NCBI RefSeq assembly: GCF_001194135.2
Contig: NC_068991.1
Span: 49,938,526-50,002,525 of the forward strand
DNA length: 64,000 nt
Reading direction: 5' to 3'
Origin: Octopus bimaculoides
Lineage: Eukaryota
Part shown: one piece after another, positions 7,900 through 64,000 of the stretch
How the letters are laid out: every line of letters starts with the position of its first letter
Position numbering within the stretch: the stretch's first letter is position 1
Made by a program: the position numbers and the translations under genes
The notes under the pieces: model-generated
What the model saw: the letters and a program-made list of their open reading frames with translations, nothing else
Databases searched by the model: none
Told to the model about the DNA's origin: nothing

Positions 7900-8255
7900 G
7901 TTTCATCATTAGATTGCAGCCATGCTGGGGCACTGCCTTGAAGAATTTTTAATTGAATGAATTGACCCCAATATTTTTTTCTTTAAAGCCTGGTTTCTTA
8001 TTCTATCAATCCTTTTTGCCAAACTGCTAAGTTACAGGGATGTAAACACACTAACATTAGTTGTCAAGCCAAAGTAGGGGACAAACACAGACACACATAT
8101 GTAGACATATATATACACACACACACACACACACAGGCTTCTTTCAGCTTCTGTCTACCAAAGCCATGCAAGGCTTAGGTCAACCCAAGGTACCAGGTAG
8201 TGGGACTGAACCCAGAACCATGTGGTTGGGAAGCAAGCTTCTTGCCACACAGCAG
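7900..8255 (-). mobile_element. tRNA-derived SINE, family A (diverged)
   Basis: Collinear with 17155-17530. Confidence 0.8.
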
Positions 8256-15042: not shown

Positions 15043-17154
15043 CTGCAAAATAAAATGCAGAGTATGTCCTATATTAAAAAATAGATAAAACAAAACACTG
15101 ACAGAAACAAGACCCTTTAGTTATGTTTAACCCTATAATTTACTGTTCAGACTTGTTGGCTTTACATAATGACCAGGAAACAATCGGCTAGGGATGGGAC
15201 AGGTCATTGAGACACCAGTGAATGTGTCATCATTATGTAGTCTATGTAGAGCAAGTCAGGTTAAAACCCAAAATTTGAAGGAAATGGATTAATTCTTGCC
15301 AACACAAAATGCCACCAGAGGAGAATATGTTGAGTCAAGTTCTTTCCATAAAGTCAAAGAAATCAATTTGCCCCATTCTTTCCAAAACAATACTCAAAAG
15401 AGAATTTGAACTCAGCACTTAAAATTCTGCATCAATTACACTGTAACAACATTTTTCATTCATTTATTGTTTTTGTCTTTGGTCAGTAAGTGTTATTTCC
15501 TATTTGCTTTTATGAAGAAATCAAAGGAAATGATAATTCCCTTCAAACTTTACTTTTGCGACCTGGACGTCAATGTTCTGAAACTGACCTATTTTCCATT
15601 ACATTTCAGACAGATTCAGCACTGAGCAGCTGAAGCAGAAATATTATTATAGTAAATATTCTGCTCAATACCACAGATTTGTTTGTCTGTAGCTTGATCA
15701 TAACCATTTGAGCATGTCCCTTGGTGGTTGACAATATGTGCATCACTGATCATGAATAAGATTAGCAAGAGGCTTAGCATATCCATGTGTTGAGAGGGAT
15801 TCTTTGGAGTTTGAATAAATGTAAGAAAAGCAGAGATTGAAGGAAATATTAGCTATTTTCATTAGTTTATAAGGGTAAGCAAATAGGAAAAACCAGTTGC
15901 TACCCAAGGATAAAAATCATCACATTGTTAAACAAAGTTCTCAATGCTTGCAACAATTACTTTGTACCTTTTATTGGATCTATTTTTTTTTAACAAAATT
16001 GACTGGGTAAGTGAAAGCAAAATCTCTTGGTTGTCAATGACATATTAATGACAATTTTTTTATTATTAGAAGCTGCTCTCCACCAACACAACTGAAAGAA
16101 GAACATCAAGAGAAACATGTAAATTAGTTTCAAAGTTTGGCACAAGGCCAGCAATTTTAGGGAAGGGGACTTGATTACATCACCCCCAGTGTTCAACTGC
16201 TACTTATTTTATACATCCCAAAAGGATAAAAGGCAAACTTGACCTAAGTGGAATTTGAACTCAGAATGTAAAGATGGAAGTACTGCTAGTAAGTATTTTG
16301 CCTGGCATGCTAGCAATTCTGCCAACTTGCCACTTTAATCAAGAGAATCGTGTAAATTACTTAGAAAATGTCTACACTGAAAATTGTTAATTAACCCTTT
16401 GGAAATAGAACCTCCTTTGGAGTTTCAGTACCAAGAAGACGGAGCCCTTTTCACAAGCCCTACAGAGGGCATACACTTATTTAAAAAAAAAAATAAAGTA
16501 ATTTACATATATAAAACTATATGCATTCTTGCAAAAAATTGAATGAACTAATAGAATTTTCATTATTCAATTGATAGATTGGTTCTGTCATCTAAGAGAT
16601 AAGACTTTTTAAGTTATTTTACTACACCTATTGATGTTAAATCTGTATACAACAAACATTTACATAATGAAATGCCATAGTTGATAAGGAGCAGGATAAA
16701 AAAAAAGGATATAACATTACTAAAAAATTGTTTAATTTTAATTTTTTCTTTTTAAATTTTGATTGTTAGTATTTTGATAAAAATGAAAAGAAATAATGAA
16801 GAGAAAAAGTAAATTTTGAAAAGATTTGTGGGGTAAAATGTACAGTTCTAATTATCATTTTCATGTGTAATTCAACATCTGTTCCCAAACTTTTTATAAA
16901 TAAAACCTATGCAAGGTCAATTTCTGTTGTCCTCAGTATTTATTAACAAAAAGTACACTTCAATGAAAGCTTTTGATATCATAATTTTTTAACATAAGAG
17001 TTTTTAATTAGTGTTGTGAGTTCTCAAAGAATTTATATTCACATCATTAGAAAATTATGAAAATGCCTTTAACTCAACTTCTAATGTCACAGAGACAGAA
17101 AATACAAATAACTAAAAAAAAAATTTTAAAAGAACATACTCTTTACTCTTTTTT

Positions 17155-17530
17155 TTACTTGTTTCAGTCATTTGACTGCGGCCATGCTGGAGCACCGCCT
17201 TTAGTCGAGAAATTCGACCTCAGGACTTATTCTTTGTAAGCCTGGTACTTATTCTATCAGTCTCTTTGCCGAACCACTAAGTTACGGGGACGTAAACACA
17301 CCAGCATCGGTTGTCAAGCGATGGTGGGGGGACAAACACACATACATATATATATATATATACATATATACAACAGGCTTCTTTCAGTTTCCGTCTACTA
17401 AATCCACTCACAAGGCTTCGGTTGGCCCGAAGCTATAGTAGACACTTGCCCAAGGTGCCACGCAGTGGGAATGAACCCCGAACCATGTGGTTGGTAAGCA
17501 AGCTACTTACCACACAGCCACTCCTATGCC
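17155..17530 (-). mobile_element. Full-length tRNA-derived SINE, family A (young, CpG-retaining copy)
   Basis: The minus strand reads GGAGTGGCTGTGTGGTAAG (A box)...GGGTTCATTCCC (B box)...CTTGGGCAAGTGTC...central (TA)/(TG) tract...GACTGAAACAAGTAAAA tail. Confidence 0.9.
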
Positions 17531-17974
17531 TACGACATGTAAAGAATTTTTTTTTTTTTTTTAAATATAGCTTAAAATAAACGCTACACTATTATTACAA
17601 GATCTGCAGAGTAATCAGTTTGCCAGACCAATATGCCTGTTTTGAGAGAAAAGGTTAAAGACAGATTAATACAAAAGTGAATCAGAAAGAGCTCAGTATT
17701 AAATCCATTTTAAGCAATAACTAAATCAGCAATCAAGAATAGGATAATAAAATTTGTCTATATCCTATTATACATTTTATCACTGAAGATATATAAGAGC
17801 AAAAGACTAGGATAATGCCATGAGATCAGTAGGAGAGAAAGCAAAGAAGTAGAAAGATATACAAAAACTAGGAAGAGAGAAATTAAAATAGTATATTTCA
17901 TCACATACTTTTACCTCATTTAATACTGGATAATTATTGGGTCTTACAAGTATACTTTTGTAAACTGTACTCAC

Positions 17975-24189: not shown

Positions 24190-24530
24190 GAGAGAGATAA
24201 GAAGCTTGTTTCCCAATCACAGTTCCAGTCCTATTGTGTGGCACCATGGGGAAGTGTCTTCTACTATCGCCTTGGGCTGACCAAAGCCTTGTGAATGGAT
24301 TTAGTATATAGAAATTGAAAGAAGCCAGTTGTGTGAGAGAGAGAGAGAGAGACACCAATGCTTGACAACCAATGTTGGTATGTTTACATCCCCATGGGTT
24401 AACGCTTCAGCAAAAGACTTTATTAAGCCTGGTGCTTATTCTATCAAAGTCCTGGGGTCAACTTATTTGACTAAAAAACCCTTCAAGGCAGTACCCTAAC
24501 ATGGGCACAGTCAAATGACTGAAACAGGAT
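24190..24530 (+). mobile_element. SINE family A (diverged) inside a SINE cluster
   Basis: GCACCATGGGGAAGTGTC...AAGCCTTGTGAATGG...GACTGAAACAG. Confidence 0.7.
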
Positions 24531-25955: not shown

Positions 25956-26315
25956 AGGCACAGGCATAGCTGTGTGGTAAGAGGCTTGCTCCCCAACCAC
26001 AGTGTTCCAGGCTCAGTCCCATTGCAAGGCACCTTGGACAAGTGTCTACTAAAGCCTCAGGCTGACCAAAGCCTTATGAGTGGAATTGGTACATGGAAAC
26101 TGAAAGAAGCTCATATGTGTGTGTGTGTCTCACACCACTGCTTGACAACCAGTGTTTGGTGTTTACATCTTCGTAACTGAGCAGTTTAGCAAGAAATACC
26201 TAGAATAAGTAGCAGGTTTTTAAAAAAAAGTTGTGAGGTTAATTCATTTGACTAAAGCTCTTCAAGGCGGTGCCCCAGCATGGCCACAGTCTAATGACTG
26301 AAACCAATAGAAAAT
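25956..26315 (+). mobile_element. tRNA-derived SINE, family A
   Basis: Collinear with 38896-39348. Confidence 0.85.
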
Positions 26316-27233
26316 TAAAACACAGATATTAACAGACATTAAAAATCAAGCAATGCTTGTGCCTGAAGGACTTTTTTAATGAGAAAAGGCCTTGCACAAG
26401 TTCAGTCCCACTTCGAACTATGTATTCATTTTCCCTAAAAGAACTAGTCTACAGAATTGGATGTTGTAGGTTCTATATTAGTGTTTTCCTTCTAGTGAAA
26501 TGTCTAAAGATTTGTTGGATGACCATCGACTCTACTGAGTTCATACATACTTTCACATTTTGTTTTACTTCTTGCAGGGTAACTGATGAAAACCACTCCT
26601 CTTATCAAGCAAACTTGGCAAGGTTGTTAATTTACTAACTGATGGCCCAACTATGCAACAGGATGCACTCAGTTACATGTTACTAATAGCACAAAAAAAA
26701 TGACCTGACATATAAATATAGATATACATATAAATACACACACACATAGTTTATAGAAAAACCAAGATGAAGACAGGTGTAGGAACAACAAGCAAGTGTT
26801 TTAGTTTGACGCTCAGGAAAAATGGAAAAGTATTTTCCTTTTCAAGCATACACTCTTTGACAGAAAGGAATAAGAGGAAATAGAGAGCGAGAATGAAAAA
26901 AAATGTGTTGAGTTCAATGGTTTAACATGACAGTACATATGTGTGTTTATCTTTCACAAATACAATAAGAGATCCAAATATTTTTTAGAGATATTTGATT
27001 ATATACAAGTACTTATAGAATATTTTTTTTAAAATATACACAGTAACCCTGCTCTTTTTATAATGTCTTATATATGTTTATCTGTGTGTGTGTATATGTT
27101 TACAAAATTCTTAATGTGAAACTTAAAACATTCTAATTTAGAACAGTCATTTAGCCAATAAAATTATATAAAGAGTAAGCAACCATCCCAATGAAGAACA
27201 CACACACTAAAGCATGTATATAAATAATTATGA

Positions 27234-30319: not shown

Positions 30320-30994
30320 AGAGAGAGAGAGATAAGAAAAATTCAAATATTTGGCAAAGAATTCTGAAGTACAAATATTTTCAATTGCTTTAGCATACAA
30401 ACATAGGTTTCCTGTAAGAACATTCATTCTTCCTATTTCTTCTTCGCAAAGCTGGATACTCTTCCTACTACTAAACATGCATCCATGAAGTGGGAGGTGG
30501 GGACAGTTGTCAACTGGCAAACTTCAGAAAATAGAGTTATATGAAAACTGTTGCCCTTATAACTGTATTCCTCATTTTGTGATGATCACAGCAATGCAAC
30601 ACTTTAAATCTGACCACTTTTGTGTCTTCATGATGTGTATGTTATTTCCTAAACAACAACAAAAACATACAAATGTATAATTATCAAGTTAATTTTGAAA
30701 TTTTAACATTTCATCATATAAGAAATGCTTGCCTAGATAACGATAATAATTATCATTCAACAGCGATATTTATAAGAAAGACGTCAGTGTGTAGTAATTC
30801 TACTAATTTGATGATTTTTATCAAATGACATCATTAAACATATAAATCTTTTAAATGATAGCAATAAATAGAGTGTGATCAGATAAAGAGTGAATAAAAA
30901 AATATATGCCAAATGAAATTTATTTTAATCAAATTAGTAAAATATTGGACAACATCCAAGTTAAACTGTTAGTGCAAGTGGCACTCTAGTTAAC

Positions 30995-31350
30995 TTTTAC
31001 TTGTTTCAGTCATTAGATTGTGTCCATACTGGGGCACCACCTTGAAGAATTTTTAGTTGAATGTATTTTTAAGTCAGGTACTTATTCTATCAGTCTCTTA
31101 TCAAACTGCTAAGTTACAGGGATATAAACACACCAACACAGGTTGTCTAGGTGAGGGTGGGGAATATATACACATGCATACACACACATAAACAGGCTTC
31201 TTTCAGTTTCCACCAACTAAATCCATTCACAAGGCTTTAGTCGAACCAAGGCTGTAGTAGAAGACACTTGCCCAAGGTGCCACACAGTGGGACTGAACCC
31301 AGAACCATGTGATTGGGAAGCAAGCTTCTTACTATACTGTCGTCCCTGTG
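30995..31350 (-). mobile_element. tRNA-derived SINE, family A (diverged)
   Basis: Collinear with 17155-17530. Confidence 0.8.
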
Positions 31351-32089
31351 TCTTCACACAGCCACGAAATAATTTCAATACTTCGTTAACTAAACATAAG
31401 TCTCATAGAAAAGAAATTAACTTTCAATAAAAGAAAACTAATTTCAATTAGAGACAAGAAAAGTTATTAAAATCTGAAAGGGTTGATAAGTTGTTTCAGG
31501 CTACAACAAGAAAAGTCAGTATCTGAGAGACATCTATACAATTAAAAAAATATGACCTATTTTATCTTGTCCATGTTATTGTAGACATTTGATTTTGAAC
31601 TGTCACCATCAGGGAACTTGTAAAAATAACAACTGACAGTTTACAAATGCCACAACAAGTTCTTTAAAAGATTAGCAGCAGTATTAGAAACCTTTCTCAT
31701 TTAACCCTTTCACTTTCATACCAGCAATGATGTTAAATAAGTTGTTGCATTCCTATAAAAATGTTGAAACTAAAAAAGATGTGATCATTTGTGATTTAAT
31801 CAAATTTTTCTTCAATCAGTGGTAATGTTTCATCAAGGCAGTCTGCCTCTCAATAAATTCAGTTGTATGTTGTATATTTTAATGGTAAAAAAGGGTAATT
31901 TCATAATAAAATTAAATTGAATTAAGTTTTGGTATATTACTGGTTACTCATCACATTTTCATGGAGATGAAAGTCGAAGCTCACTCCAGGAGGATTTGAA
32001 CTCAAATACTAGTGTTGAAATGAAAAACATTTAATGACATTCTAAACTTTCTATTATAACAAATTCAGCTTAAAATAAAGGATGCAGTC

Positions 32090-33655
32090 AGTAAGGTGAG
32101 AGTTGGCAATGAGTATAGCGATGAATTCAGGGTACAAGTAGGGGTTCACCAAGGATCAATCCTCAGCCCCTTTCTGTTCATTATAGTCCCCCAGGCAATA
32201 ACAGAGAAATTAAAGATGGGCTGCCCTTGGAAGCTCCTCTAAACCGATCTTGTTTTTATAGCTGAATCACTACCAGAACTAGAAGAAATTTCAGGTCTAG
32301 AATCGAAGAGCCTTAGAGTTAACCTAACAAAAACCAAAGTCTTAGTAAGTAGGAAAGGTGACAAATCACAAATCCTTTCAGGTAGATAGCCCTGCTTGAT
32401 CTGTAGGAAAGGCATAGGTAGAAATTCCATAAAATGTACCTGGTGCAAGCTATGGACACATACGAGATGCAGCAATATCAGAGGTAGGTTAACTGGGAAA
32501 ATAGATTTTGTGTGGAAGGTGCACAGGTACAATAAATACTAGAAATGTACAGAAAATAGACTGTCAAATGCCAGTAGGGTAAGCTAAAGGTACTTGATAG
32601 CTTCTGTTAGCTAGGTGACCAAGTGAGTAGTGAAGGTAGATGCTCAGAGTGTAGCTGCATAAATAAGAATCGGCTGGGCAAAGTTCAGAGAGCTCCTACC
32701 TCTGCTGGCAACAGAGGGCCTCTCCCTCAGAGTGAAAGGCAAACTGTTTGATGCTTCTGTGTGAACAGCTATGCTACACAGTCGTGAAACATAGGCTGTG
32801 ACTGCTGAGGACATGCATAGGCTTGAAAGAAATGAAGCTAGCATGCTTTGCTGGATTGCAGTGTCAGTGTGTATGTACAACCGAGTGTAAATGGCTTGAG
32901 AGAAAAGTTGGGCATCAGATGTAGTGTGCAAGAGAGACAACTGTGCTGGTATGGTTATGTGATGCGTATGGATGAGGATAGCTGCGTAAAGAAGTACCAG
33001 CCTCTAACTGTGAAGGGAACCTGTGGAAGAGATAGACCCAGGAAGACATGGGATGAGGTGGTGCAGCATGATCTTCGAGCATTGGGCTTCACAGAGGCAA
33101 TAACAAGTGACCAAGACTTTTGGCAATATGCCATGCTCGAGAAGACCCATCAAACCAAGTGAAATCATAGTTATGGCTGATGCTGGTGTCATGTAACTGG
33201 CATCCATGCCAGTGGCATATAAAAACCATCTTTCAAGCATTGGATCTCACAGAGAAAATCTGGCTTATGCCAGTGTCACGTAACTATCACCTGTGCCAGT
33301 GTAGCACAACGAACACTTGTGCCAGCGACATGTAAAAAGCACTTTTGAGCGTTCAGCCTTACACAAGCAATGACAAATGACCAAAACCTTCGGCAATATG
33401 CCACGCTCAAGTAGAAAACCCATCAAACCATTGTAGCTGAAATTGTACTGGTGTCATGTAACTGGCACTCATGCTAGTTACACAGAAAAGCACCCATTAC
33501 ACTGTTGGAGTGGTTGGTGTTAGGAAGGGTATCCAGTCGTAGAAACCATACCAAATCAGACTGGAATATGGTCCAGTCCCTCAACCTGCCAACCCTGGTT
33601 AAACCATCCAACCCTTGCCAGCATAGACAACAGACATTAAACGTTGATAATTGAT
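32090..33655 (+). mobile_element. 5'-truncated, degenerate RTE-clade LINE: RT C-terminal half plus 3' UTR/tail
   Basis: Translates to KVRVGNEYSDEFRVQVGVHQGSILSPFLF and QLCWYGYVMRMDEDSCVKK...GRDRPRKTWDEVV. It has frameshifts and stops, and ends in a degenerate GAT tail. Confidence 0.9.
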
Positions 33656-36600
33656 GAAAGAAGAATATAGGAAATTGTGTCAATAATTGGAAGTGAATGA
33701 ACAATTTTATAGAATAAAGTACTTAACAAATAAAATGCTTGGATTAAAAATAAACCAAACTGGTTCTGTAAAAATAAATTCCAAGAGAACAAAAATGTTC
33801 AAATATACTCATTAAAAAACTGGCAAAATATATCCCAAGTGTATTTGTTTGTAATATATATATTAACACCCACCCCTGCCCCCGAAAGAATAAGCTCTAG
33901 TTCAATCATATGGAAACAAATTTTTGTTGACTAGGCACAAGGCCAAATATTGTTGGGTTGAGAATAGTTGAAAGATTGGCTCCCCGCATAGAACTAGAAC
34001 ATACATTTTCTTCTCCAAATTAACATTAATTCTCAAGGTAAGACTTTTCTTCCCTGAATCATTTGTATGTTTATCCCTCTTCAGTACAGATGGGTGTGCG
34101 TGCGTGCGTGTGTGCGCGCGCGTGCATACACACAATATATCTTTAACACTCTTGTATATATGGGTGTGTGTGTGTGTATGCATGCAAATGATGTAATACC
34201 TAACTATGATATATAACAAGCAGCTGTAAATAAATGGAATAAATATCTATTCTCTCACCTCACTTCTCTTATCTGTTCTATTTATAACGTGTGCGTGTGT
34301 GCGTGCGTAGATGTGTGGTAAGAAGATTGCTTCACAACCACATGGTTTTAAGTTCAATTTCACTGCATGGCACTTTGGCCAAGTGTCTTCCACTATAGTC
34401 CCAGGACAACCAAAGCCTTGCAAATGGATTTGGCAGAAAGAAACAGGAAGAATCCTATTGGTGTTGGGGGGAGTTTACAGTCTTTTTGACATTGTGTGAT
34501 GTCTGGTAGTGGGGAAATATTAGCTTGCCTGGAAATACATGATGGTTGGCAACAGGGAGGGCATACACCTCAAAGAAATTCTGTCAGCCCCATGCCAGAA
34601 AGGAAAAGTGAACATTAAACCAATGATTGCTATATATATATATATATATATAAAATCTAAGAACAGATGAACCTAATGTAGGCTTTGTTAAAGCATATCT
34701 CTAGAAAGTCATTCTGATATAAAACCAGATACACAGGGAACAGAACTGAACATTTTGGGGAACTTTCGCTTACACTTGAGATCATGGTGCTTCCACATTC
34801 CTAGCCTGCAACCCAGATTGGTACTGGGTATATTGCCCTGGTTTGCCTCTGGATCATATCAGAGTGGAGAGTGTTTGTGAAGTCCAGTGCAAGCCTTACT
34901 GGACCTAAAATTTTTAGACAGTGCTGTAGCAAGCATGGAAGCCACAGACAAGCACCCAGGTGAAGCTGACTGCTGGTGTAATAACCTCATGCATGGGTAT
35001 TACAGGCATTTTGCATGAGCAATGATCAGTTATGGTCTTCCTCAGTCAGAGGTAAACAGCCATCATACAGTAAATTATCATAGTGCAGCTGAGAGAAATT
35101 ATTCATACACCCTTGACAAACAAATCCAGACATGGTCTAACTAGATCTCTAGAAAACCAAGTTCACCAAGCTAAGACTAGAATATATTCAAAGCTATCAT
35201 ATAGCTTATCCAAAATAATTAAATGTATCATATGTCACTAAACAAATACTGTCTTTTTTTCATAATTATATTTTCTAATAACCTCGTTTAAATGCTTACT
35301 GCATTAAATATGTTCATACTCAGTTTAACATTCAACACTGACTAGTCTATTGATGCCGCTCAGTCCATCCATCCATTTACTTTCAGTGTAAGCCAGTCAG
35401 TATCATCAGTCTTTCACTATCTTGACTGATTTCAGTTTTTGCAGCAATAGGGTACAGAATGAAATGTGTAACAAAATATTACAAGAAAAAAAAAAAAACA
35501 CCTCTATCAAAGCATTTCTGTAAAATGAAACATTCACATGTTTAACACACACAAGGACCATTATTTTATGTGGTAATTATAAAACAGTTTTAAAAGTGAC
35601 AATGTTTCAAACAAACACACAATACATGACTAAAAATGATAGATTTACAGTCACTTCATTCCAAAAGAAAGAAAAAAAACTATTACAGGACAATAAAAAT
35701 GGCGAGACTATCAAAATAATTGATTGGTGTAACACTAAAGTGAAGATATAGTAAAAATCTATATCATCTCGCAAATCTCTTGAAATAGCATTAACTAAAT
35801 GACAACTGAAAAATTTGTTTACATGTTGGTACTAAGATAAAAAAAACTAAATTTGATAACATTTTGTTGCATTGTTTTCAAATTTGATGTATTTCTGAAC
35901 TATAGATAAATATGGCTCTGAGTCATCCAAAAAATCAAGTCCAGCAGTTATGAATGTTACAAAGAGATAAACAGTAATACTAAATCTTGTATATTTTACT
36001 TGTTAATGGAGAATAGGTCATCCAGGATGGAGGGAGTGGGGATACAAGCTTGTAGAGAATTATAGACACACAGGTAAGAATAACTTAAAACATAATATTT
36101 AGTTATATTAATCCCTTTTGATACCAACCAGCCCAAGATTGCCCTCACTTCTATGCTACAAACTATCTATATAAAATGATCTAAATTAAATTGGCAAGGA
36201 ATTTTAATGAGAAATTTTATGTTCCAATTAACAGCTTAGTAATGACCAAGCATCACCTTCATACTACAAAGTTACTCAAAAAAACACAATATATCATCTG
36301 GTTCAGAAATGTACACACACACACACATAAAGCTGAAAAGTGAAGAGAACAACATTCTACAAGTCAGCAGTGAACTCCACAGGAAACACTCTTTTCCAGA
36401 CAACCTCCCATATAATCTCAAAACAGATGGACTAACATACCTCAAAAGACAACATGGAGGTGAAGTGCTCAGCATACCAAAAAGACTATATATGGGTAAG
36501 TTTCCCAAACACTTGAAGTGATACCCACATGTGACATGAAGTGCAGACTCTTTTGGGTTCACGACCACTACATCACATCATACTTTGAAGATTACGCATT

Positions 36601-38895: not shown

Positions 38896-39066
38896 GACAT
38901 GGGAGTGGCTGTGTGGTAAGTAGCTTGCTTACGAACCACATGGTTCCGGGTTCAGTCCCACTGCGTGGCACCTTGGGCAAGTGTCTTGTATTATAGCCTC
39001 AGGCCGACCAAAGCCTTGTGAGTGGATTGAGTAGACAGAAACTGAAAGAAGCTTGTTGTATATATG

Positions 39067-39099
<33 letters not shown>

Positions 39100-39348
39100 T
39101 TGTGCATCTGTGTTTGTCATATGTATATATATATATATATATGTGCGTGTGTGTGTGTGTGTTTGTCTCCCAACATCGCTTGACAACCGATGGTGGTGTG
39201 TTTACGTCCCCGTAACTTAGCAGTTTGGCAAAAGAGACCGATAGAATAAGTACTAGGCTTCCAAAGAATAAGTCCTGGGGTCAATTTGCTCGACTAAAGG
39301 TGGTGCTCCAGCATGGCCACAGTTAAATGACTGAAACAAGTAAAAGAG
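38896..39348 (+). mobile_element. Full-length tRNA-derived SINE, family A
   Basis: GGAGTGGCTGTGTGGTAAG...GGGTTCAGTCCCACTGCGTGGCACCTTGGGCAAGTGTC...GACTGAAACAAGTAAAAGAG. Confidence 0.9.
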
Positions 39349-40841: not shown

Positions 40842-40979
40842 AAACATGACTTTACCTCTTGCTCATCAACATTTGGCATATTATATTTCTCTAGTGGTGT
40901 GTAGATAATTCAATAATCAAGGTATCCAGATTTGATCCAAGAAACAAGCCTCATTGATTATTTAAATGTATGAAGGGCG
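40842..40979 (-). repeat. 138-bp inverted copy of 44224-44361 (interior of the 3' LTR)
   Basis: Direct base-by-base comparison gives about 5 mismatches in 138 nt. Confidence 0.9.
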
Positions 40980-42801: not shown

Positions 42802-43097
42802 AGGCTGACTGTGAGTAAATTAAAAATATTCCCGGCCAAATCTGGACCCACAATCCTGAAATTTTGGATTCCGAAGTTTTCATTTCTGTGATTGCATTCA
42901 GCGATTTTTTTACATGACTTTTTGCGACAAATTTTTTTGTACGATACTTTTTATAATCTAAAGGCTAACTCTGTGAGTAAATTAAAAACATTCAGGGCCA
43001 AATCTGGACCTACAATCCTGAAATTTTGGATTCCTACGTTTTCATTACTGCAATTGTCTTCAACAATTTCTTTTTTTTTACATGATGTTTTGCAATG
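42802..43097. repeat. Diverged tandem duplication, ~160-bp period
   Basis: AGGCTGACTGTGAGTAAATTAAAAA..GGCCAAATCTGGACC.ACAATCCTGAAATTTTGGATTCC at 42802 and again at 42962. Confidence 0.9.
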
Positions 43098-43190: not shown

Positions 43191-43554
43191 GGGAGTCAGT
43201 TGCTTAAAAGCTATATACTAGCTTAAAAGCCACCCTATTGGGAAGCTTTTAAACTAGTCCTTTAATGATAACTAAAATATACTGAAATTATTGTCTCCAT
43301 TATTGGACTGTTGCTTCAAAACTTTCAGAATAAATTCATCTTGGATTGTGAAAAATAAATAGCTTATAAACCTGATAGTTCTACCATCAGCAAATATAAC
43401 TTTTATTCACAGAGTAAATATATCATTAAGAAAAAAGAAAAAGGTTTTAACTAAATTGAGAAAAAGATTGAGACAAAATTTTTAAATAATTACAAGAAAT
43501 AGAATTTGTAATTTACAAACAACAATATAAGATGGCCATAAATGCAATTAACTT

Positions 43555-44954
43555 TGTAGCGTAGACTCTATATGTGCATTCGAACGTAGCAGGGACCAAC
43601 TGGCCTTTGGCCGCTCTTCAATTATATATTTATTGTATCGACTGTGTGATGTACTAAAGAGCTATTCTCGTCACCTCACATTGCACAGTCGCTACAAATT
43701 GGTAACCCCGATTTAGAACACGCATTGTTTTCCATAGTTCAGTGCCATTTTTCATATTACTTTAAAGATTAACCATTCTTTCTAATTTCATATCTTCACT
43801 ACAAATATATTTTCTTTTTATTGTTTATTTTGTCTCCAACAAAATGACTGGTGAGTGGCTATATGTAGCATAGACTATATGTACATTCGAATGAAGTAGA
43901 GACCAACTGGCCTTCGGCTGCTATTCGTATCCTGTTGTGTCAACTACTCTGATTGGTTGGTATTGGTGCAATTTGTCTCCTACTCTGTTGTGTCAGCTGA
44001 CCGCAGATAGCCAATCAGAGACTTTACATAGTATCATGTGAACAACCTTTTTCAAACCCTATTTCGAGCCAACTACTTTCTATAAAAATCCTGGCTTTTC
44101 TTCAATACACATCTTTGGTTCCTGACCTTTTATGGTCAAGCCACTGACCACATAGACACAGCCAGTTCCAGTGACAACACCACAGCAGCTACTCAGACTT
44201 ACCAACTTCATCCAACAGCATTACGCCCTTCATACATTTAAATAATCAATGAGGCTTGTTTCTTGGATCAAATCTGGATACCTTGATTACTGAATTATCT
44301 ACACACCGCTACAGAAATATAATATGTCAAACGTTGATGAGCAAGAGGTAAAGTCATGTTTGCCACAATCATCATCTTAACGTTGTCAACATCATCTCTC
44401 TATGTACACAGCTCAGCAAGCAATTCACCCAGGTTCCAACACTGCACTGTTTGTGCACAGATCAACAACGACTATACAACCTGCATGAACTCCTGTATCA
44501 CGTGAACCAGGCAGCAGCATCACAGCCACAACTTCACATACGACATGTACCTGTAACCATCTCCGCATCATGACTAACTTCTTGATACAGTATTTCAACT
44601 ACCCTGTACTAGTGACTATGAACTGGTATTATTGATCTTTTCACTTCTCTCTATAGACTCTTTCACTGTCAACTTAACATCCTTAAACACACACACACAC
44701 ACACACCCATGCCTATACACACATACACGCATAAACTTTCTTCTCACAACAGCCTGTCAATTTATTTCTGTATCCATGATGCACACACACACAAACACAA
44801 ACATTATATCAATAAATCTCTTAATCATTCTACACGGTTGTGTCTTTTTCCCTCTGGCAAATATAAGTAGCATTCAAATCCATATATTTATTGTATCAAC
44901 CATGAGATGTACTAAAGAGCCATTCTTGTCACCTCACATTGCACGGTCTCTACA
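43555..44954 (+). mobile_element. Non-autonomous LTR retroelement (TRIM-like, Gypsy-type signals): 5' LTR 43555-43696, internal 43697-43863, long 3' LTR 43864-44954
   Basis: Both repeats start TGTAGC and end CTACA. They share ~65 bp at the 5' end and ~75 bp at the 3' end. PBS TGGTAACCCCGA at 43700-43711 resembles the complement of the tRNA-Trp 3' end. A purine-rich GGTGAGTGG lies just before the 3' LTR. ACTT flanks both ends (43551-43554, 44955-44958). No gag/pol coding sequence. Confidence 0.8.
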
Positions 44955-45146
44955 ACTTCATAAGACACAGATTCAAGTAAAAACAAAAACAAAAGAAATT
45001 GGAAATTCAAATAAAAAGGACACTTTTAAACCTGAAGAAAATCATACTAAAATTAAAAGTTAGGAGCACTGCCTCTTAAGTATTTTACATTATATTCATT
45101 GTTGATAGATTGATTTCTTAGAGACTATCATTATATTTCTTTTCAG

Positions 45147-45276
45147 AGCATGGATTTTATTCAATATACAAATAAAGTTTGATCATATATTTAATCTGCA
45201 AATTTACAGACGGCAAATTTACAGATTGACTGATGATGGATTTACAACAGAATGTATTCAACAGTCAGAATTACAG
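45147..45276 (+). CDS. Candidate coding exon, phase 2-0: AWILFNIQIKFDHIFNLQIYRRQIYRLTDDGFTTECIQQSELQ
   Basis: Acceptor ATTTCTTTTCAG| and donor CAG|GTAATA. 43 open codons; the other two frames are closed. Confidence 0.45.
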
Positions 45277-48509: not shown

Positions 48510-48730
48510 TTGGTGACGCTGCCGGAGCTGGTGCCATGTAAAAAGCACTCAGTTCACTCTGTGAGGTGGTTAGTGTTAGGAAGGGTATCCAGCTGTAAAA
48601 AAAAAAAAAAAAAAAAAAACATGCCAAAACAGACACTGAAGCCTGGTGCAGTCTTCTGCCTTGCCAGCTCCTGTCAAACCATCTAACCCATGCCAGCATG
48701 GAAAGCAGGCATTAATTGATGAATGATGAT
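48510..48730 (+). mobile_element. Stand-alone RTE 3'-tail repeat (family E)
   Basis: AAAAAGCAC..GTGGTTAGTGTTAGGAAGGGTATCCAGCTGTAAAA..AACCCATGCCAGCATGGAAA..GATGAATGATGAT. It matches 33480-33655. Other copies lie at ~470-572, ~6230-6340, ~55745-55910(-) and ~63200-63360. Confidence 0.75.
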
Positions 48731-51700
48731 ACTGGAAGGATTCAACCACATTGTGCACAATAAAAGAAATGCTTAATTTCTAAGTTCTCAGCAAATATTT
48801 TGGAATATTCATGCATATCATTTATTCTTACTTATAAATCTTTTTTTTTTTAAATTATTTTTAGCATTCATTTATGATAATAATTCATAGATTCTAATTT
48901 GCATGTTTTTTGGCAACAGTTTTCCCCAAGTAACAGCTATGACTAGTACACAGGACATGAATTATCTTGGTTTTGTATGTGAGAGACACTAATGAAGCTT
49001 CCGTTTGGAGATGGGCACATCCCTACTCATTGAAAGCATGTTGCAATAAGTTTTAAGGTCACAAATTTAGAAAGATGGAGGTTAGTCTATTAAATCAACT
49101 CCTGTATTTTATTTTATCAATTCCAGAAGGACAAACAGTACAGTTGACTTCAGCAGGATTTGAACTCGGAACATAAAAGCTAGAACAAATACTAGAAGGC
49201 ATTTTGTCTAATGCTCTCATGGTTCTGCCAATCCATCCCTCTAGTTTATAGTAACAATAATAGCAATATAACAATAAGAACAGTTGTGACAATGTTGAAA
49301 GGCTAGAGTGCCAACATAAATAAGGACATAGGTTTTGAAAGTAAGGCAGTTAAGAGATAAATAGAAAAGGCTAAAACTGTGTTTATGTGTATGTGTGCAT
49401 GTATGACTACATGTGTACAAAATTGAAAGAGGTAAAACAGAAGCAGTATAGATAGGCAAAACATAAATAATAACTTAAGACTAGTTTCTAAAAATAAAAT
49501 AATTTCTGAAAACAGAGAAAGCAGAGAGGAAGCAGTTTGGAATTTGATACCAAGATTACATGAATATAGGTCAAACAATATGGACTAGAATTATAGAAAT
49601 GTCCTAATTATTTCAATTGCATATCATATGTGCAAAGACAAAAAAAACTGTAGCAACAGTGAATTCCACAGAATTATAAGATTATCTTTTAACCCAAAAG
49701 GATCAAGAGCAATGTTAAATTCCAGCATTAAACAGAAGAAACAAATCCATTTCTAGGCCAAAAAAAAAAAAAATTAAATTAAATAAATAAAAACTGGTCT
49801 GATGCAAGTAAATTTGCCCACAAAGAAATGAAACAAAATTCAGATATTTATTTTTCCATATCAAAGTAAACTAAGTCAATGTAGAATTGTGTCTCACAGT
49901 CAGAAGTACAAAGTTCCTGCTGTGGATGCGCATGCCTTTCACCATTTGCAAAAAGAGATTTCTGAAGTAGTTTAGCTTTGTATAAAGTGTAAACAAATAT
50001 TTAATAAATAACTAATCAACCCCTAAACTTCAACGAAAAAAATTTTGATAAATTGTCTAAATCATTCAAACATCAAAAGACCTACAGTATTTAGTCACAA
50101 CCATTTATGTCCTGAGTTCAAATCATCCTGATACCATCTTTAGCTTTCATCTTTCTGAAGTTGATAAAGTACCAATCAAGTACTGGGGCATGGGGTGATT
50201 CCTATAATGTTTTCAAAATGTGAATGGAATTATAATAGACAATTTTTACAATGGAAATTTATGTCAAATGTAAATGTGAGAGGAACATTTTCAAACTCAC
50301 AATCATCACAACTCTTTTTACCTTTCAGACATGGATAAAGATGCAGAATCCTCTTTTATCAGTTTTATAAGTCCACCTTGGCAATTCATCAGAAAAGCAG
50401 ATTATCAGCCAAAAGGTCAAAGATTCATCTCCAATGACTGTATAATTTACAAAGACAATTTTCATTGACCCAGTTCTTCAAGCTGGAAATAGTTACAGTC
50501 AGCTGTGGTATAGCAGAATTGACAAGCAAGCACAATAGTAGACAGGCACAGCCAGCCAAAAAAGATGCCCTTTGACTGCTTAACAATATGGAAATTGAAC
50601 TATGCTCCAAGATATATCATTATTGTCTGTGCAGGACATCTGATGGAGTGAGCTGAACAAGTATTTATTATGGTATATTGACTCCTTACATTTGACTGGT
50701 GTCTTGTCTGGGTTCTACTCTTCCACACATCTACTGACACTAAAAAAATTTCATCTAACTTGGAGATTACTGAATCACAGGAAATAAACTCAATTTTATC
50801 TAAGTATACCCTAATTAATTTCTGCAGTCTGCACTAAACCATCCCTCCACCACTTTTACTATGCACATGTTCACCTTACTAAAAAGAAGAATGTATTTAT
50901 AATAGATATTTAATATTTTCTGTTACAGTAAGCACAGTATATTGCAGGACAAAAAATAATTTATGAGCAAACTACATGTGTACAATACACAATGTAGTTT
51001 ACGTTAGAACCCAGTTTAACATAACATTTCGAAAACATCTTTATTTCTGACAGGTAAGAGATGTGAAATAAATGCAACTGTCCTATTAGCCAAGCACACA
51101 AATGTTTGTAGCAAACTTGGAATCAAAATAAGTCCAATAGACATCTATTCCGTTATTTTCCTAGACAGTAAGATAATAATATAGGTTACAGCAATCAAGT
51201 AATACAAACATCAAACTTGTTACATGTCACCTTATTAATGTTTTTGGTATTTTTCATCATCCATAATTATTCTAGGTAAAATAAAATGAGTGAAAGATGG
51301 TGAAATATATATCTGCATATATTATAGAAAAATGAAAAAAAAAAAGGAGTGCCAGAGAACAAAAGTAAGCTTCTTTTATGATAAGCTTGACTTTGTTTCT
51401 CAGTTGGAACTAAAGATGTTAAGCTATTTCTTCAATCCATTTATATGGTTTTCTATTGAATGTTCTAGAAAATTTTAAAATAAGCACAAACTTATTTAAA
51501 CAAAAGTAGAATAGATTGATCTCTAGGTATTGTATTCATTTATTGGTTGCTCTCTGACAGGTTTGTGATCAAGTCTGTGACAGTGGGGATCTCCAGGGAC
51601 CTGGGCCCCGCTGCCAGACAACATCCTTGCTCACTACTATTGAGGTGGAAATGGCTATCTGCAAGTGCAAGCTCCATGAGTTAGAGTGACTGCTCCAGCG

Positions 51701-55149: not shown

Positions 55150-55620
55150 GGGCACCTTGTGAGTATAATTGTATGTGGTTATTGACAAGGTAGAACCTAA
55201 TAACAAGAGGCCAGATATAGTTTTGGGGTCTGAAAAGGCAATAAAAGTAATCTTGATCAAACTTACAGTCTCATGGGAAAAAGAGTGTGACCAAGGCTTT
55301 GAACAGAAACATGCAAAGTATGAGCCTTCTGCAGGAAGATTCTCAAACTGTAAGACTGCAGAGAGAAGGGATGACAGTCATGGTTTTTCCCCAGTCAAGG
55401 CTAGCTATAGAGGATTCTCTGCTCAGTCAGTAAAGAGGATGCTTACAAACACTGGAATGAGGAAAGAAGCAAAGGGTGGCTGTGCACAGGATGGGAGAGG
55501 CAGCTGAAAAGAGCATTTTGCTGGTTGTGGAGCAAAAGAGAAGAGTTAAGCTGGAAGCCAGGAAGACATGATGAGCAATGATTTGGCCACCTCTGCTGAC
55601 CCACCATTGGGATGGTTCAG
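55150..55620 (+). mobile_element. 3' fragment of an R2-superfamily (HERO/NeSL-like) non-LTR retrotransposon, restriction-like endonuclease domain
   Basis: KRPDIVLGSEKAIKVILIKLTVSWEKECDQGFEQKHAKY...VKASYRGF matches the RPDIV..ELTVPWE..KY..VEVGCRGF signature. It is followed by AEK...CWLWSKRE. Confidence 0.8.
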
Positions 55621-56065: not shown

Positions 56066-56879
56066 GACAGAGTCACTATGTACTTTGCAGAACAAAATGA
56101 AGCAAAAACCCCTCAACTGGGAGGAGTGAATAGTGTTGAGGTATGGTGGCTTTGTGCCAGTTGAGAGATTAAAGGTATAAAGGGACAGAGATAGGTGTCT
56201 TGCGGTAGATACACAGACACCCCAGATGGAAAGGAGAGGAGAGTGAATTATATTTATTATCATTGTTTTTTGACAACTACTTTTCCATGCTCACAAGGGT
56301 AAATTTTCTACAGCTTGATGCCCTTCTTATCACCAACCCTTACCTGTTCCCAAATTAGGTAATATTTTCCCATGGCCTGACATTTGAATGGAAGATTGGA
56401 AACTATCAACACTGCTTGTATATCAGTGATGCTCGTTCGCAACTATCATGCAATGTCAAATCAAGACGCAAACACACCCACCCACACAATGCATGTGCAC
56501 ACATACATCCCACATGTGCATATTTTTTTCCTGGCTCACTTTTTGTTTTGTGTATCTGCTTTCTTTTCCTCCCAGGTTTGCCTAGACTTTTCTCTGGTGT
56601 CTGAAGAAGAATTACGTCTGACACATAATACTCCATCACTTGAACATCAAACTAATAACCTTGACTGTGAAAGTCTCTTGTACTTTTGTTGTTTTCATTG
56701 TATGATAGGTTTTCAATTTCCATCTACCAAATTCACTCACAAGGTTTTGATCAATCTGGGGCTGTAGTGGAAGATACTTACCCACAGTGTCATGTAGTGG
56801 GACTGAACTGGAAACCATGAGGTTTAGGAAGCAAACTTCTTAACCACACAGAAAGTAGTCTTGTTTGATGTGCAGGAAA

Positions 56880-59976: not shown

Positions 59977-60469
59977 TACACACACATACACACACAACCT
60001 CACCAGCCATGGATCTAAAGTCACTCAAGTCCCTTTCCAAGTCAACCCAAACTGAAAGGCACCACCAGCTTCCTGTTGAGTCCTGAAATACGATTTCACT
60101 TTTAATAATCCCATGCAATTTATCTCAACCAATAGCAGTCCAGTTTACAGTAGCCATCTTGAACTTCCTGCACCTCTCCATTCAGCTGCCAGGGTCAGAC
60201 GAGTTAAGTTTCTGTAAGAAACCTACAAACCTAAGTTGCATGGGACAGAATCAAACTGTTTTAAATAATATTTATATCTGTGTATCTTTTATCTTTCATG
60301 GACCAGCCATCTGAGTTGACAGCAGTATGATAGATAAAGCAATCAAGAATTACTCCATCTGTCATACATAAAAGACAGAAATCCCCTGGTCCATCAGGAA
60401 TTACAACCAAAATATTTAAAATATTTGGCAGTGGGATGTGGCCTTGTCACCTGTACAGTTAATCAGGTT

Positions 60470-61800
60470 GTACTGAAAGGGTACGCTACCCAACAACTGA
60501 TATGGCAGCATTATAGTCAACAGCTACAAAGGTAAAGCAGCTATCTTAGAAGTAATTACAGAAGCATCAAATTGCTGGACCAGGTGAAAGTTACTGAAAG
60601 AATTGTAGTTCAATTAAACTGGAAGAGAATTAACCTCAATGAGATGAAGCTTGGTTTTGTGCCAGAGAGAAGTACTACTGCTGTTCTCTTTCTAGTAAGG
60701 CAAATACAGAAATATTTAGCCAAAAATAATAAACTGTTGTACTTGGCATTCATCAACCTAAACAAAGCCTTCAACAGGATCACTCACTCCCTGATTTAGT
60801 GATCACTGCAGAAGCTAGGAATAGACAAATGGCTGGAGTGAGCCATTCAGCCATAAACAAAATGCCATCAATAAGGTGAGAATTAGTAGTAAGTCTAGCA
60901 ATGAATTCAATATTGTTCCCCATGCTATAACAGAGGAGTTTCAGATTAATTGCCTATTGAAACTACTCTATGATGAAGACTGTTCCTAAACCTGAATCTG
61001 TAGTATAATCAGGAAAGAAATTCCAAGCATGGAAACCAAACCTGGAATCAAAGACGTTATAGTTAACTCAGCAAAGATCAAAGTTCTTGTAAGCAGGAAA
61101 ATTGACAGGCTGCTACTCCCTTCAAGAAAATGGCCTTGTTCAATATGTATAGAAGTCAGAGGTGGAAATTCCATATAATGTAGACAGTATAAGCTTTGGG
61201 CATATAAGAGGTGCAATTGAATCACAGGAAGGTTAACAGAGAACAGACTTTGTAGCAGATGCATCAGAGCAATATTAAGAACACATGGGAAATAGAGTTT
61301 CTTTTTAATGCCTAAAAGAATCCTGGTAATAGAAACTATCTACAGATAGTTTTGGTTATCAAGGTGATCTAATTAGCAGTGAAGGATGTTCTCAACATAT
61401 AATTACTTAAAAAGAACCAGCTGGAGAAAGCTCAGGAAGCTGTTACCTCTGTTGGTAATAAAAGTGTTCTCTCTAGGAGTGAAAGACATATTGTACGAGG
61501 CAGTGTATGAACAGCAATGTTACATATTAGGGAGACATAGGCCATGAGTACAGAAGACTAGACATCTAGACATACAAAGACTAGACAGAAGCTAGCATGC
61601 TACATTAGATGTGCAAAATCAGTGTGCATGTATGACAAGGTGTAAGTGTGTTGAGAGAAAAACTAGGCATAAGAGGTATCAGATGTGGTGTGCAAGAGAC
61701 AACTGTGCTGGTATGGCCATGTGATGTATATTGTGAAAACAGACCGTGGATGTTGAGCCTGATGGAGGAGATGTCAATTTGACAATTTGCTGTGCTCAAG
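60470..61800 (+). mobile_element. Degenerate RTE-clade LINE reverse-transcriptase fragment
   Basis: GFVPERSTTAVLFLVRQIQKYLAKNNKLLYLAFINLNKAFNRI. Downstream sequence parallels the 32090-33000 copy. Confidence 0.85.
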
Positions 61801-63379: not shown

Positions 63380-63730
63380 AGCATAGCTGCATGGTAAGAA
63401 GTTTGCTTCCCAACCACGTGGTTCCAGGTACTGTCCTACTGCGTGGCATCTTGGGCAAGTGTCTTCTGCTATAGCCTTGAGCTGACCAAAGCCTTGTGAC
63501 AGAAGCCTGTTGTATATATGTGTGTTTGTGTGTGTGTGTGTTCCCCCCCACCATTGCTTGACAACCGATCTTGGTGTGTTTACATCCCCGTAACTTAGCA
63601 GCTTGGGAAAAGAACCAACAGAATAAATACTAGGTTTGCAAAGAATAAGTCCCGGGGTCAAATTGTCCGACTAAAGGTGGTGCTCCAGCATGGCCAAAGT
63701 CAAATGACTGAAACAAGTAAAAGAATAAAT
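63380..63730 (+). mobile_element. tRNA-derived SINE, family A
   Basis: Collinear with 38896-39348. Confidence 0.85.
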
Positions 63731-64000
63731 AAATATACATACTCACACAAGCTTCCATACTGCTTCTGTTGACCAAATTTCACTCAAAGAATCATCTCAA
63801 CACTATTGTAAAAGACATTTTCCCAAAATACTATGTAGTGGCACCAAACCAAGAACTTGGTTACAGAGCAAACTGTTTACCCACACAATCACACCTGTAC
63901 CTATGTTATGGATAAGTATTTTGGAAACCCCACAGCTATTATACCATTCTCTAAGATTGCTTTCGAGTCTAGTCACATTAGCTTTTCCTTTAATGAAAAT

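What the first reader, a model, noticed from the sequence alone, without database searches (positions are those of the whole stretch)
43551..44958. Complete miniature LTR retroelement (TRIM-like) with a tRNA-Trp primer site and strongly asymmetric LTRs
All integration hallmarks are present in 1.4 kb with no coding capacity. Seen directly: ACTT TSD, TGTAGCG...CGCTACA termini on a 142-bp 5' repeat, AAT spacer, PBS TGGTAACCCCGAT, a 167-bp internal region, a purine-rich tract, and a 1091-bp 3' repeat with the same two ends. Established: eukaryotic tRNA-Trp ends ...GUCGGGGUCACCA, whose complement TGGTGACCCCGAC matches 11/13. The long LTR contains CCAAT boxes (~43952, ~44011) and AATAAA (44811), as expected for a full U3-R-U5. 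Because LTRs are identical at insertion, either the 5' LTR lost ~950 bp or the 3' LTR gained it afterwards. I am not aware of a described cephalopod TRIM family of this kind, but cannot check databases.
Basis: partly seen in the sequence, partly recalled or inferred. Interest (0 to 1): 0.75.

Follow-up and report, generated by a model that had tools for sequence, protein, structure and literature searches.

The report
Decayed gene-less LTR retrotransposon in octopus
This is an old, dead copy of a small gene-less LTR retrotransposon in an octopus-type genome, with one end repeat shortened: an ordinary genomic fossil, apart from an unexplained, recently duplicated 138-base piece.

Summary
These are the ACTT target-site duplication, a 142-bp 5' LTR (TGTAGCG...CGCTACA), an AAT spacer, a primer-binding site (PBS), a 167-bp internal region and a 1091-bp 3' LTR. 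The PBS matches the 3' end of tRNA-Trp at 11/13 positions. After a 4-nt gap the match continues into the tRNA T-arm (23/25 aligned; 0 of 2000 shuffles score as well). No reading frame holds a protein domain. The polypurine tract is weak.

The short LTR is the long LTR minus about 950 bp (43927-44881). That stretch is bounded by a short direct repeat (GCTATTC / GCATTC). It holds the only CCAAT boxes, TATAAA and AATAAA of the LTR. I therefore favour a deletion in the 5' LTR over an insertion in the 3' LTR.

The LTRs differ by 12.5%, so the insertion is old. Inside the extra part, 138 bp are 96% identical to an inverted copy 3.2 kb upstream (40842-40979). This piece looks like a first exon and is unexplained.

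Shared SINE and LINE families place the window in an octopod. I could not test whether this is a true multi-copy TRIM family, because no cephalopod genome was searchable. It is a new member of a known kind, of low interest.

The parts
43551..43554 (.). Left target-site duplication, ACTT
   Evidence: Identical 4-mer directly flanks both LTR outer ends. Chance about 1/256 given boundaries fixed by homology.
43555..43696 (+). 5' LTR, 142 bp, internally deleted form (TGTAGCG...CGCTACA, 7-bp terminal inverted repeat)
   Evidence: Two homology blocks to the 3' LTR. Has a TATATA at 43623 but no CCAAT, TATAAA or AATAAA.
43700..43724 (+). Primer-binding site for tRNA-Trp. Core is 43700-43712 (11/13). 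After a 4-nt gap the match continues to the T-arm complement (TTAGAACACGCA, 11/12).
   Evidence: Alignment to the tRNA-Trp reverse complement printed in bioRxiv 10.1101/400127. 0 of 2000 shuffles reach the score. Only hit for the core pattern in the window.
43697..43863 (+). Internal domain, 167 bp, T-rich and non-coding
43841..43858 (+). Degenerate polypurine tract (AAAATGACTGGTGAGTGG, 13/18 purines), ending 5 nt before the 3' LTR
   Evidence: All of the most purine-rich 12-mers of the internal region lie here. Weak.
43864..44954 (+). 3' LTR, 1091 bp (TGTAGCA...TCTCTACA), probably close to the original LTR
43927..44881 (+). About 950 bp present only in the 3' LTR. Bounded by the imperfect direct repeat GCTATTCGTATCC (43920-43932) / GCATTCAAATCC (44871-44882). 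Contains a 53-bp tandem pair with CCAAT boxes (43925-44030), TATAAA at 44081, (AC)n tracts and AATAAA at 44811.
   Evidence: (repeat D7). C-over-G skew.
44224..44361 (+). 138-bp segment that looks like a first exon: 14-codon upstream ORF, ATG at 44324, 8 codons (MSNVDEQE), GTAAAG donor at 44348. It is 96.4% identical to 40842-40979 on the minus strand.
40842..40979 (-). Inverted twin of the 138-bp segment (MPNVDEQE + GTAAAG). A TATA-like CTATATAG lies about 25-35 bp upstream of where the identity begins.
44955..44958 (.). Right target-site duplication, ACTT

Best explanation
This is a fossil copy of a non-autonomous LTR retrotransposon in an octopod genome.

Shown:
- One integration event produced LTR - AAT - PBS - 167-bp non-coding internal domain - weak PPT - LTR, flanked by a 4-bp duplication of ACTT.
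- The PBS is complementary to the 3' end of tRNA-Trp. A second stretch is complementary to the tRNA T-arm.
- Nothing in the element encodes a protein domain.
- The two LTRs have since diverged by 12.5%.

Inferred:
- The RNA was reverse-transcribed from a tRNA-Trp primer and integrated by the proteins of an unidentified autonomous element. A Gypsy-type partner is the best guess, given the 4-bp TSD and a tRNA-Trp PBS as in animal Gypsy families.
- The element moved in trans as a gene-less, TRIM-like unit.
- At insertion both LTRs were of the long form (about 1.1 kb): U3 with two CCAAT boxes and TATAAA, and a poly(A) signal 144 bp from the end.
- The 5' LTR later lost about 950 bp by a deletion between the short direct repeats GCTATTC and GCATTC. 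That removed its promoter-like part and poly(A) signal and killed the copy.
- The 138-bp segment in the 3' LTR was exchanged with, or copied to or from, the locus 3.2 kb upstream much later.
For: - Structure and boundaries.
- TSD ACTT on both sides.
- PBS: the only match in the window, 3 nt after the LTR. The alignment to tRNA-Trp is 23/25 with one 4-nt gap, and 0 of 2000 shuffles reach its score.
- No coding capacity.
- The internal domain length (167 bp) is within the TRIM range. Animal TRIMs with 4-bp TSDs, and Gypsy partners using tRNA-Trp, are documented (PMC10886601).
- Long form ancestral: every canonical pol II signal of the LTR (CCAAT, TATAAA, AATAAA) lies in the part missing from the 5' LTR, at the positions expected for U3 and for the R/U5 boundary.
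- Deletion rather than insertion: the extra part is bounded by a 6-7 bp (loosely 12-13 bp) direct repeat, and the 5' LTR keeps a single hybrid copy of it. This is the usual signature of illegitimate-recombination deletions in LTR elements (established knowledge). The extra part has no transposon ends, no poly(A) tail and no terminal inverted repeat.
- Host: an Octopus vulgaris RT protein is the best named hit for a LINE in the window. A 20-kb O. vulgaris locus shares the window's SINE at 86-91% and its LINE at 74-77%.
Against: - Only one copy is available. No family, solo LTR or partner element was seen, so movement in trans is inferred, not shown.
- A copy that has demonstrably suffered one large deletion could equally have lost its coding region after insertion.
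- If TATAAA at 44081 and AATAAA at 44811 are the real signals, R would be about 700 bp, which is unusually long.
- 138 bp of the extra part are far younger than the LTR pair: 3.6% against 12.5% divergence, Fisher p = 0.007. So at least part of the long LTR was changed after insertion.
- A flanking direct repeat is also what an insertion with a target duplication would leave.
- The PPT is weak.
Confidence: 0.45

Rival explanations
1. A canonical miniature TRIM (142-bp LTRs, about 450 bp in total) whose 3' LTR later received about 950 bp of foreign DNA. The 3' LTR gained sequence; the 5' LTR did not lose it.
For: - The short form has exactly TRIM dimensions (PMC10886601; biv-TRIM LTRs are 202-218 bp).
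- The extra DNA is bounded by a direct repeat that could be a 6-7 bp target duplication.
- 138 bp of it are only 3.6% diverged from a nearby locus, so they are younger than the LTR pair.
- An unrelated insertion into a TRIM terminal repeat has been reported in a bivalve.
- The short LTR has a TATATA motif.
Against: - The extra DNA has no hallmark of any transposon class: no TG..CA ends, no terminal inverted repeat, no poly(A) or simple-repeat tail.
- Only 138-161 of its 950 bp have a source in the window.
- It would by coincidence supply CCAAT boxes, TATAAA and AATAAA in the order and positions expected of a native LTR.
- The short LTR has no poly(A) signal.
Confidence: 0.22
2. The remnant of an ordinary autonomous LTR retrotransposon (1.1-kb LTRs) that lost its gag-pol region and most of its 5' LTR in two separate deletions after insertion. 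On this reading it is not a TRIM family at all.
For: - The copy is old (12.5% LTR divergence) and has at least one large deletion.
- 1.1-kb LTRs are typical of autonomous animal elements (established knowledge).
- No second copy supports a non-autonomous family.
Against: - It needs a deletion whose two breakpoints fall within about 100 bp of the PBS and of the PPT, removing every trace of coding sequence while sparing both priming sites.
- The 167-bp internal domain is within the normal TRIM range.
Confidence: 0.27
3. The asymmetry arose during reverse transcription. A template jump between the GCTATTC and GCATTC repeats while plus-strand strong-stop DNA was made would give a shortened 5' LTR and a full 3' LTR already at integration.
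For: - Mechanistically possible, because the 5' LTR is copied from plus-strand strong-stop DNA (established model, inference).
- Both integration ends are intact, and there is microhomology at the junction.
Against: There is no direct evidence. The outcome cannot be told apart from a later genomic deletion with this single copy.
Confidence: 0.03
4. An artefact: an assembly collapse inside the 5' LTR of a gapped draft assembly, or a chance arrangement that is not a retroelement.
For: The window contains several N gaps (367 N). The 8-mer TCTTCAAT at the 5' LTR junction also occurs at 44099 in the long LTR.
Against: - There is no N within 43300-45200.
- The two LTRs are 12.5% diverged, so they would not be collapsed onto each other.
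- TSD, terminal inverted repeat, PBS position and LTR homology together are far beyond chance.
Confidence: 0.03

Closest known systems
TRIMs (terminal-repeat retrotransposons in miniature): plants, Hymenoptera, cestodes, bivalves (biv-TRIM)
   Same: Two terminal direct repeats with TG..CA ends, a short (167 bp) non-coding internal domain bounded by a PBS and a PPT, a short TSD, and no proteins (definitions in PMC10886601 and PMC6934838).
   Different: Total length is 1400 bp against <1000 bp. One LTR is 1091 bp against about 100-320 bp. Only one copy is known, so neither family status nor mobilisation in trans is shown. No sequence relationship to any described TRIM could be tested.
[quoted passage not shown]
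   Same: Non-autonomous LTR elements. Animal Helenus make 4-bp TSDs, and some use tRNA-Trp as primer.
   Different: There is no tRNA-like or 5S-like sequence in either LTR (ARAGORN; Rfam). The tRNA similarity here is the antisense PBS in the internal domain, not a promoter in the LTR. The long LTR has pol II-type signals instead.
Autonomous Gypsy-type LTR retrotransposons with a tRNA-Trp PBS (for example Gypsy-32_NVi, cited in PMC10886601)
   Same: tRNA-Trp primer, 4-bp TSD, TG..CA LTR ends, and an LTR size (about 1.1 kb) within the usual range.
   Different: No gag, protease, RT, RNase H or integrase remnant in any frame. The partner element itself was not found.
Extended primer-genome contacts beyond the PBS (yeast Ty1 boxes and Ty3 bipartite PBS with the initiator tRNA-Met T and D arms; recalled from memory)
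   Same: A second stretch just downstream of the PBS is complementary to the T-arm of the primer tRNA (11/12).
   Different: Different tRNA and host. Here it may equally be a once-continuous 29-nt complement broken by a 4-nt deletion. Function is untested. T-arm-like 12-mers also occur elsewhere in the window.
LARDs (large retrotransposon derivatives)
   Same: Non-coding LTR elements mobilised in trans.
   Different: LARDs are several kb long with a long internal domain. Here the internal domain is 167 bp.

Membership tests
LTR retrotransposon (integration product) | Direct terminal repeats ending TG...CA with short inverted termini | tested here: met
   TGTAGCG...CGCTACA and TGTAGCA...TCTCTACA. 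Homology blocks have E-values of 5e-11 and 8e-21.
LTR retrotransposon (integration product) | 4-6 bp target-site duplication | tested here: met
   ACTT / ACTT.
LTR retrotransposon (integration product) | PBS complementary to a tRNA 3' end, just downstream of the 5' LTR | tested here: met
   11/13 to tRNA-Trp, 3 nt after the LTR, extended to 23/25 with one gap.
LTR retrotransposon (integration product) | Polypurine tract immediately upstream of the 3' LTR | tested here: inconclusive
   Only 13/18 purines, though this is the most purine-rich part of the internal domain.
LTR retrotransposon (integration product) | Two LTRs of equal length and sequence | tested here: not met
   142 against 1091 bp, and 12.5% divergence in the shared parts. 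Explained by age and a later rearrangement.
TRIM | Total length below 1000 bp with LTRs of roughly 100-320 bp (PMC10886601) | tested here: not met
   1400 bp, with a 3' LTR of 1091 bp. It would be met only if the 950 bp are a later insertion.
TRIM | Short non-coding internal domain with a PBS and a PPT at its ends | tested here: met
   167 bp, no Pfam hit, PBS present, PPT weak.
TRIM | Multi-copy family mobilised in trans by an autonomous partner sharing LTR ends and PBS | not testable with these tools
   No other copy in the window or in 20 kb of O. vulgaris. Metagenome and viral collections are empty. No cephalopod genome, Repbase or Dfam was available.
Helenus / Cassandra / Ajax (TRIMp3) | tRNA-derived or 5S-derived pol III promoter inside the LTR | tested here: not met
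   ARAGORN finds no tRNA in the window. No Rfam tRNA or 5S match in 43300-45200 at E <= 10.
Autonomous Gypsy / BEL / Copia element | gag and pol (protease, RT, RNase H, integrase) coding sequence | tested here: not met
   No domain in six-frame translations of 43555-44954.

The most novel reading that the evidence does not exclude
The long LTR carries, or has donated, a working gene start. Downstream of its CCAAT boxes and TATAAA lie a short upstream ORF, an ATG, eight codons and a consensus splice donor. The same 138 bp, 96% identical, sit inverted 3.2 kb away behind their own TATA-like motif. This could be an LTR that captured the first exon of a host gene. It could equally be a host gene or lncRNA whose promoter-proximal exon derives from this LTR family, kept similar by selection or gene conversion. 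Either would be a case of LTR-host exon exchange in a cephalopod.
Probability: 0.12. Interest if true: 0.45.

Novelty: new member of a known kind. Interest (0 to 1): 0.2.

Why it matters
It matters little on its own. Non-autonomous LTR elements (TRIMs and their relatives) are known from plants, fungi and several animal phyla, including bivalve molluscs. A decayed copy in an octopus extends the list rather than the concept.

It is useful in three practical ways:
- As an annotation, and as a dated insertion marker (12.5% LTR divergence) for comparing octopod genomes.
- As a seed for finding the family and its tRNA-Trp-primed autonomous partner in cephalopods, whose LTR elements are poorly described.
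- As a worked example showing that unequal LTRs can be read from junction microhomology.

The 138-bp near-identical inverted duplicate is the only part that could lead somewhere new, such as exon capture or LTR-derived gene starts.

Tried and rejected
1. Other copies in the window. BLAST of the element and of the whole window against itself, motif searches with mismatches and local alignments at the two near-hits found none.

2. Copies elsewhere.
- Exact-pattern scans of the JGI metagenome contigs with an LTR-end 27-mer and a 30-mer of the 138-bp piece found nothing.
- Scans of IMG/VR with LTR-end and LTR-start patterns found nothing.
- These collections are not expected to hold cephalopod DNA.

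3. Exact look-up of 10 ORFs of the element and window in the protein collection. None is present, so I did not run protein-based searches for paralogous LTR copies.

4. Small-RNA origin of the LTRs or of the 138-bp piece. ARAGORN, Rfam at E <= 10 and RNA folding (z-scores +0.4 to +1.5) were all negative.

5. Coding remnants. Pfam on all six frames of the element gave only two sub-threshold chance hits.

6. A head-to-head pair of paralogous genes explaining the inverted 138-bp twins. tblastx of the left flank against the right flank found only shared interspersed repeats.

7. A host gene in the window, to fetch the orthologous Octopus vulgaris locus. I judged a second whole-database protein search with these ORFs too unlikely to succeed to justify its cost.

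8. The 20-kb O. vulgaris locus L001 holds no copy of the LTR, only the shared SINE and LINE families.

9. Rejected readings: solo LTR (two LTRs plus a PBS are present), Helenus or Cassandra type (no small-RNA module), LARD (too small), and opposite orientation (no TGG-type PBS next to the long LTR on the minus strand).

Full report
**What is there.**
- ACTT at 43551-43554.
- A 142-bp repeat at 43555-43696 that starts TGTAGCG and ends CGCTACA, a perfect 7-bp inverted terminus.
- AAT, then TGGTAACCCCGAT at 43700-43712.
- An internal stretch of 167 bp (43697-43863).
- A 1091-bp repeat at 43864-44954, starting TGTAGCA and ending TCTCTACA.
- ACTT again at 44955-44958.

The two repeats share only their ends. 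Block 43555-43619 matches 43864-43926, and block 43624-43696 matches 44882-44954. Within-window BLAST E-values are 5e-11 and 8e-21. In 136 ungapped aligned positions there are 17 differences (12.5%), 14 of them transitions, and about half lie at CpG sites. Joining the flanks gives an empty site AATTAACTT|CATAAGAC with a single ACTT. The TSD could formally be read as AACTT if the LTR ended in AC, but the canonical CA end favours 4 bp.

**The primer-binding site.** The reverse complement of human tRNA-Trp is printed in bioRxiv 10.1101/400127. The same 18-mer is listed as 'complementary to tRNA Trp' in PMC4635179.
- The element matches its first 13 bases at 11 positions. One of the two mismatches would be a G-U wobble in an RNA duplex.
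- A local alignment continues after a 4-nt gap: TGGTAACCCCGA--T--TTAGAACACGCA against TGGTGACCCCGACGTGATTTGAACACGCA. The second stretch is complementary to the T-arm.
- None of 2000 shuffles reach the total score. The downstream part alone is reached by 10 of 2000.
- The 13-mer with up to 2 mismatches occurs only here in both strands of the window.
- As a caution, T-arm-like 12-17-mers also occur near 21540 and 55730, probably in tRNA-derived SINEs. Their adjacency to the PBS, not their mere existence, is what is significant.
- There is no TGG-type PBS next to the long repeat on the other strand, so the orientation is settled.
- The polypurine tract is weak: AAAATGACTGGTGAGTGG, 13/18 purines. 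It is nevertheless the most purine-rich spot of a 40%-purine internal region, and it ends 5 nt before the 3' LTR.

**No genes, no small-RNA module.**
- ORFs in the element are short or encoded by (AC)n tracts.
- Six-frame translations give no Pfam domain above noise.
- ARAGORN finds no tRNA in the window.
- Rfam finds nothing in 43300-45200, even at E <= 10.

The element is therefore not an autonomous copy with recognisable remnants. It is also not a Helenus, Cassandra or Ajax type TRIM, whose LTRs carry tRNA-derived or 5S-derived promoters (PMC10886601).

**Host.** An RTE-like LINE fragment at 32080-33162 was used as a query. Its best named hit is an Octopus vulgaris reverse-transcriptase protein at 57% identity; named hits from other phyla are below 42%. 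The 20-kb O. vulgaris locus around that gene (L001) shares the window's roughly 350-bp SINE at 86-91% and its LINE at 74-77%. The window therefore comes from an octopod. The exact species was not determined; the frequent short N gaps suggest a draft short-read assembly.

**Which LTR changed?** The extra DNA of the 3' LTR is 43927-44881.
- It begins with two 53-bp tandem units (repeat D7) carrying an inverted and a direct CCAAT box within the palindromic pair CTCTGATTGG / CCAATCAGAG.
- TATAAA follows at 44081, and AATAAA lies at 44811, 144 bp before the LTR end.
- That is the order and spacing expected for U3, R and U5. The 5' LTR has none of these signals apart from a TATATA.
- The extra DNA is bounded by GCTATTC(GTATCC) on the left and GCATTC(AAATCC) on the right. 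The 5' LTR has one hybrid copy, GCTCTTCAATT.
- The extra DNA has no TG..CA ends, no terminal inverted repeat and no tail, so it does not look like a nested transposon.

Deletion between short direct repeats is the common way LTR elements lose sequence (established knowledge). I therefore favour loss of about 950 bp from the 5' LTR. The counter-arguments are real:
- A direct repeat is also what a target duplication would leave.
- R would be about 700 bp long.
- Part of the extra DNA is demonstrably young, as described next.

**The 138-bp twin.** Segment 44224-44361 is 96.4% identical to 40842-40979 on the minus strand: 5 differences, or 91% over 161 bp if a weak 20-bp extension is included. This is significantly less diverged than the LTR pair (3.6% against 12.5%, Fisher p = 0.007). 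The exchange therefore post-dates the insertion, or else the segment is under constraint.

Both copies contain the same 14-codon upstream ORF (their one difference in it is synonymous). It is followed by ATG, eight codons (MSNVDEQE / MPNVDEQE) and GTAAAG. At the 40.9-kb copy a TATA-like CTATATAG sits 25-35 bp upstream of where the identity begins.

I found no support for real genes:
- No paralogous downstream exons.
- No Pfam domain in 95 non-repeat ORFs of the window.
- No RNA structure and no Rfam hit.

The segment remains unexplained. Candidates are local templated repair or gene conversion, two copies of an unrecognised repeat, and exon capture or donation.

**What kind of element?** By structure it works like a TRIM: terminal repeats, PBS, a tiny non-coding internal domain and a PPT, moved by another element's proteins. 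Membership is a different matter.
- It fails the size criterion used by Kojima: <1000 bp, with LTRs up to about 320 bp.
- The family-level criteria could not be tested. There is no second copy in the window or in L001.
- The searchable DNA collections hold no match.
- The element's ORFs are not in the protein collection.

Three readings remain:
- A non-autonomous element with roughly 1.1-kb LTRs and a deleted 5' LTR (my choice, 0.45).
- A remnant of an autonomous element after two deletions (0.27).
- A true 450-bp TRIM with an insertion in its 3' LTR (0.22).

A reverse-transcription error or an assembly artefact take the rest.

**Novelty and verdict.** TRIMs are described in plants, Hymenoptera, cestodes and bivalves. 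My literature searches found none described for cephalopods, but Repbase and Dfam could not be consulted. This is a new member of a known kind at most, and a dead one. Interest is low (0.2). The most novel reading left open is LTR-host exon exchange through the 138-bp twin (probability about 0.12).

Noticed in passing
window 40842-40979 (-) and 44224-44361 (+): A 138-bp inverted duplicate, 96.4% identical, with sharp boundaries. It looks like a first exon: upstream ORF, ATG, 8 codons and a GTAAAG donor. It is far less diverged than the LTR pair that contains one copy.
   Followed up: partly
window 43712-43724: Complementarity to tRNA-Trp resumes in the T-arm (TTAGAACACGCA, 11/12) after a 4-nt gap downstream of the PBS. 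This is either a bipartite primer contact or a broken 29-nt complement.
   Followed up: partly
window 7898-8253, 17142-17532, 25956-26318, 30994-31335, 38908-39345, 63386-63733 (plus partial copies at 24198-24330, 34312-34460, 56711-56851): A SINE-like repeat of about 350 bp, present in at least 8 copies at 65-90% mutual identity. The same family occurs in Octopus vulgaris (L001:1151-1527) at 86-91%.
   Followed up: partly
window 32080-33162 (+) and 60372-61730: Degenerate RTE-like LINE fragments with an RT domain and a zinc-finger/PHD-like tail. The best named protein hit is from Octopus vulgaris (57% aa). Three related copies lie in L001.
   Followed up: partly
window 6865-7279: A 415-bp stretch that is its own reverse complement at 91% (a long palindrome), directly next to an N gap. 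It could be a foldback element or an assembly artefact.
   Followed up: no
window ~21540 (-) and ~55730 (-): Exact or near-exact 12-17-mers matching the tRNA-Trp T-arm complement (TGAACACGCAAC). They are probably heads of tRNA-derived SINEs; the second lies in a repeat also present at 462-576 and 48620-48734.
   Followed up: no
window 42809-42925 / 42971-43093: A local tandem duplication of about 115 bp (83-86% identity), 0.5 kb upstream of the element.
   Followed up: no
window 1-64000: No Pfam domain in 95 non-repeat ORFs of at least 40 aa, and no tRNA genes. There are many (AC)n and (AG)n microsatellites and 367 N in several short gaps. The window looks like gene-poor intergenic or intronic DNA from a draft assembly.
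   Followed up: partly
window 55169-55507 (+): A 112-aa ORF with an 'RPDIVL...KY' type motif that I recall from the C-terminal regions of some animal retroelements. It has no Pfam hit.
   Followed up: partly
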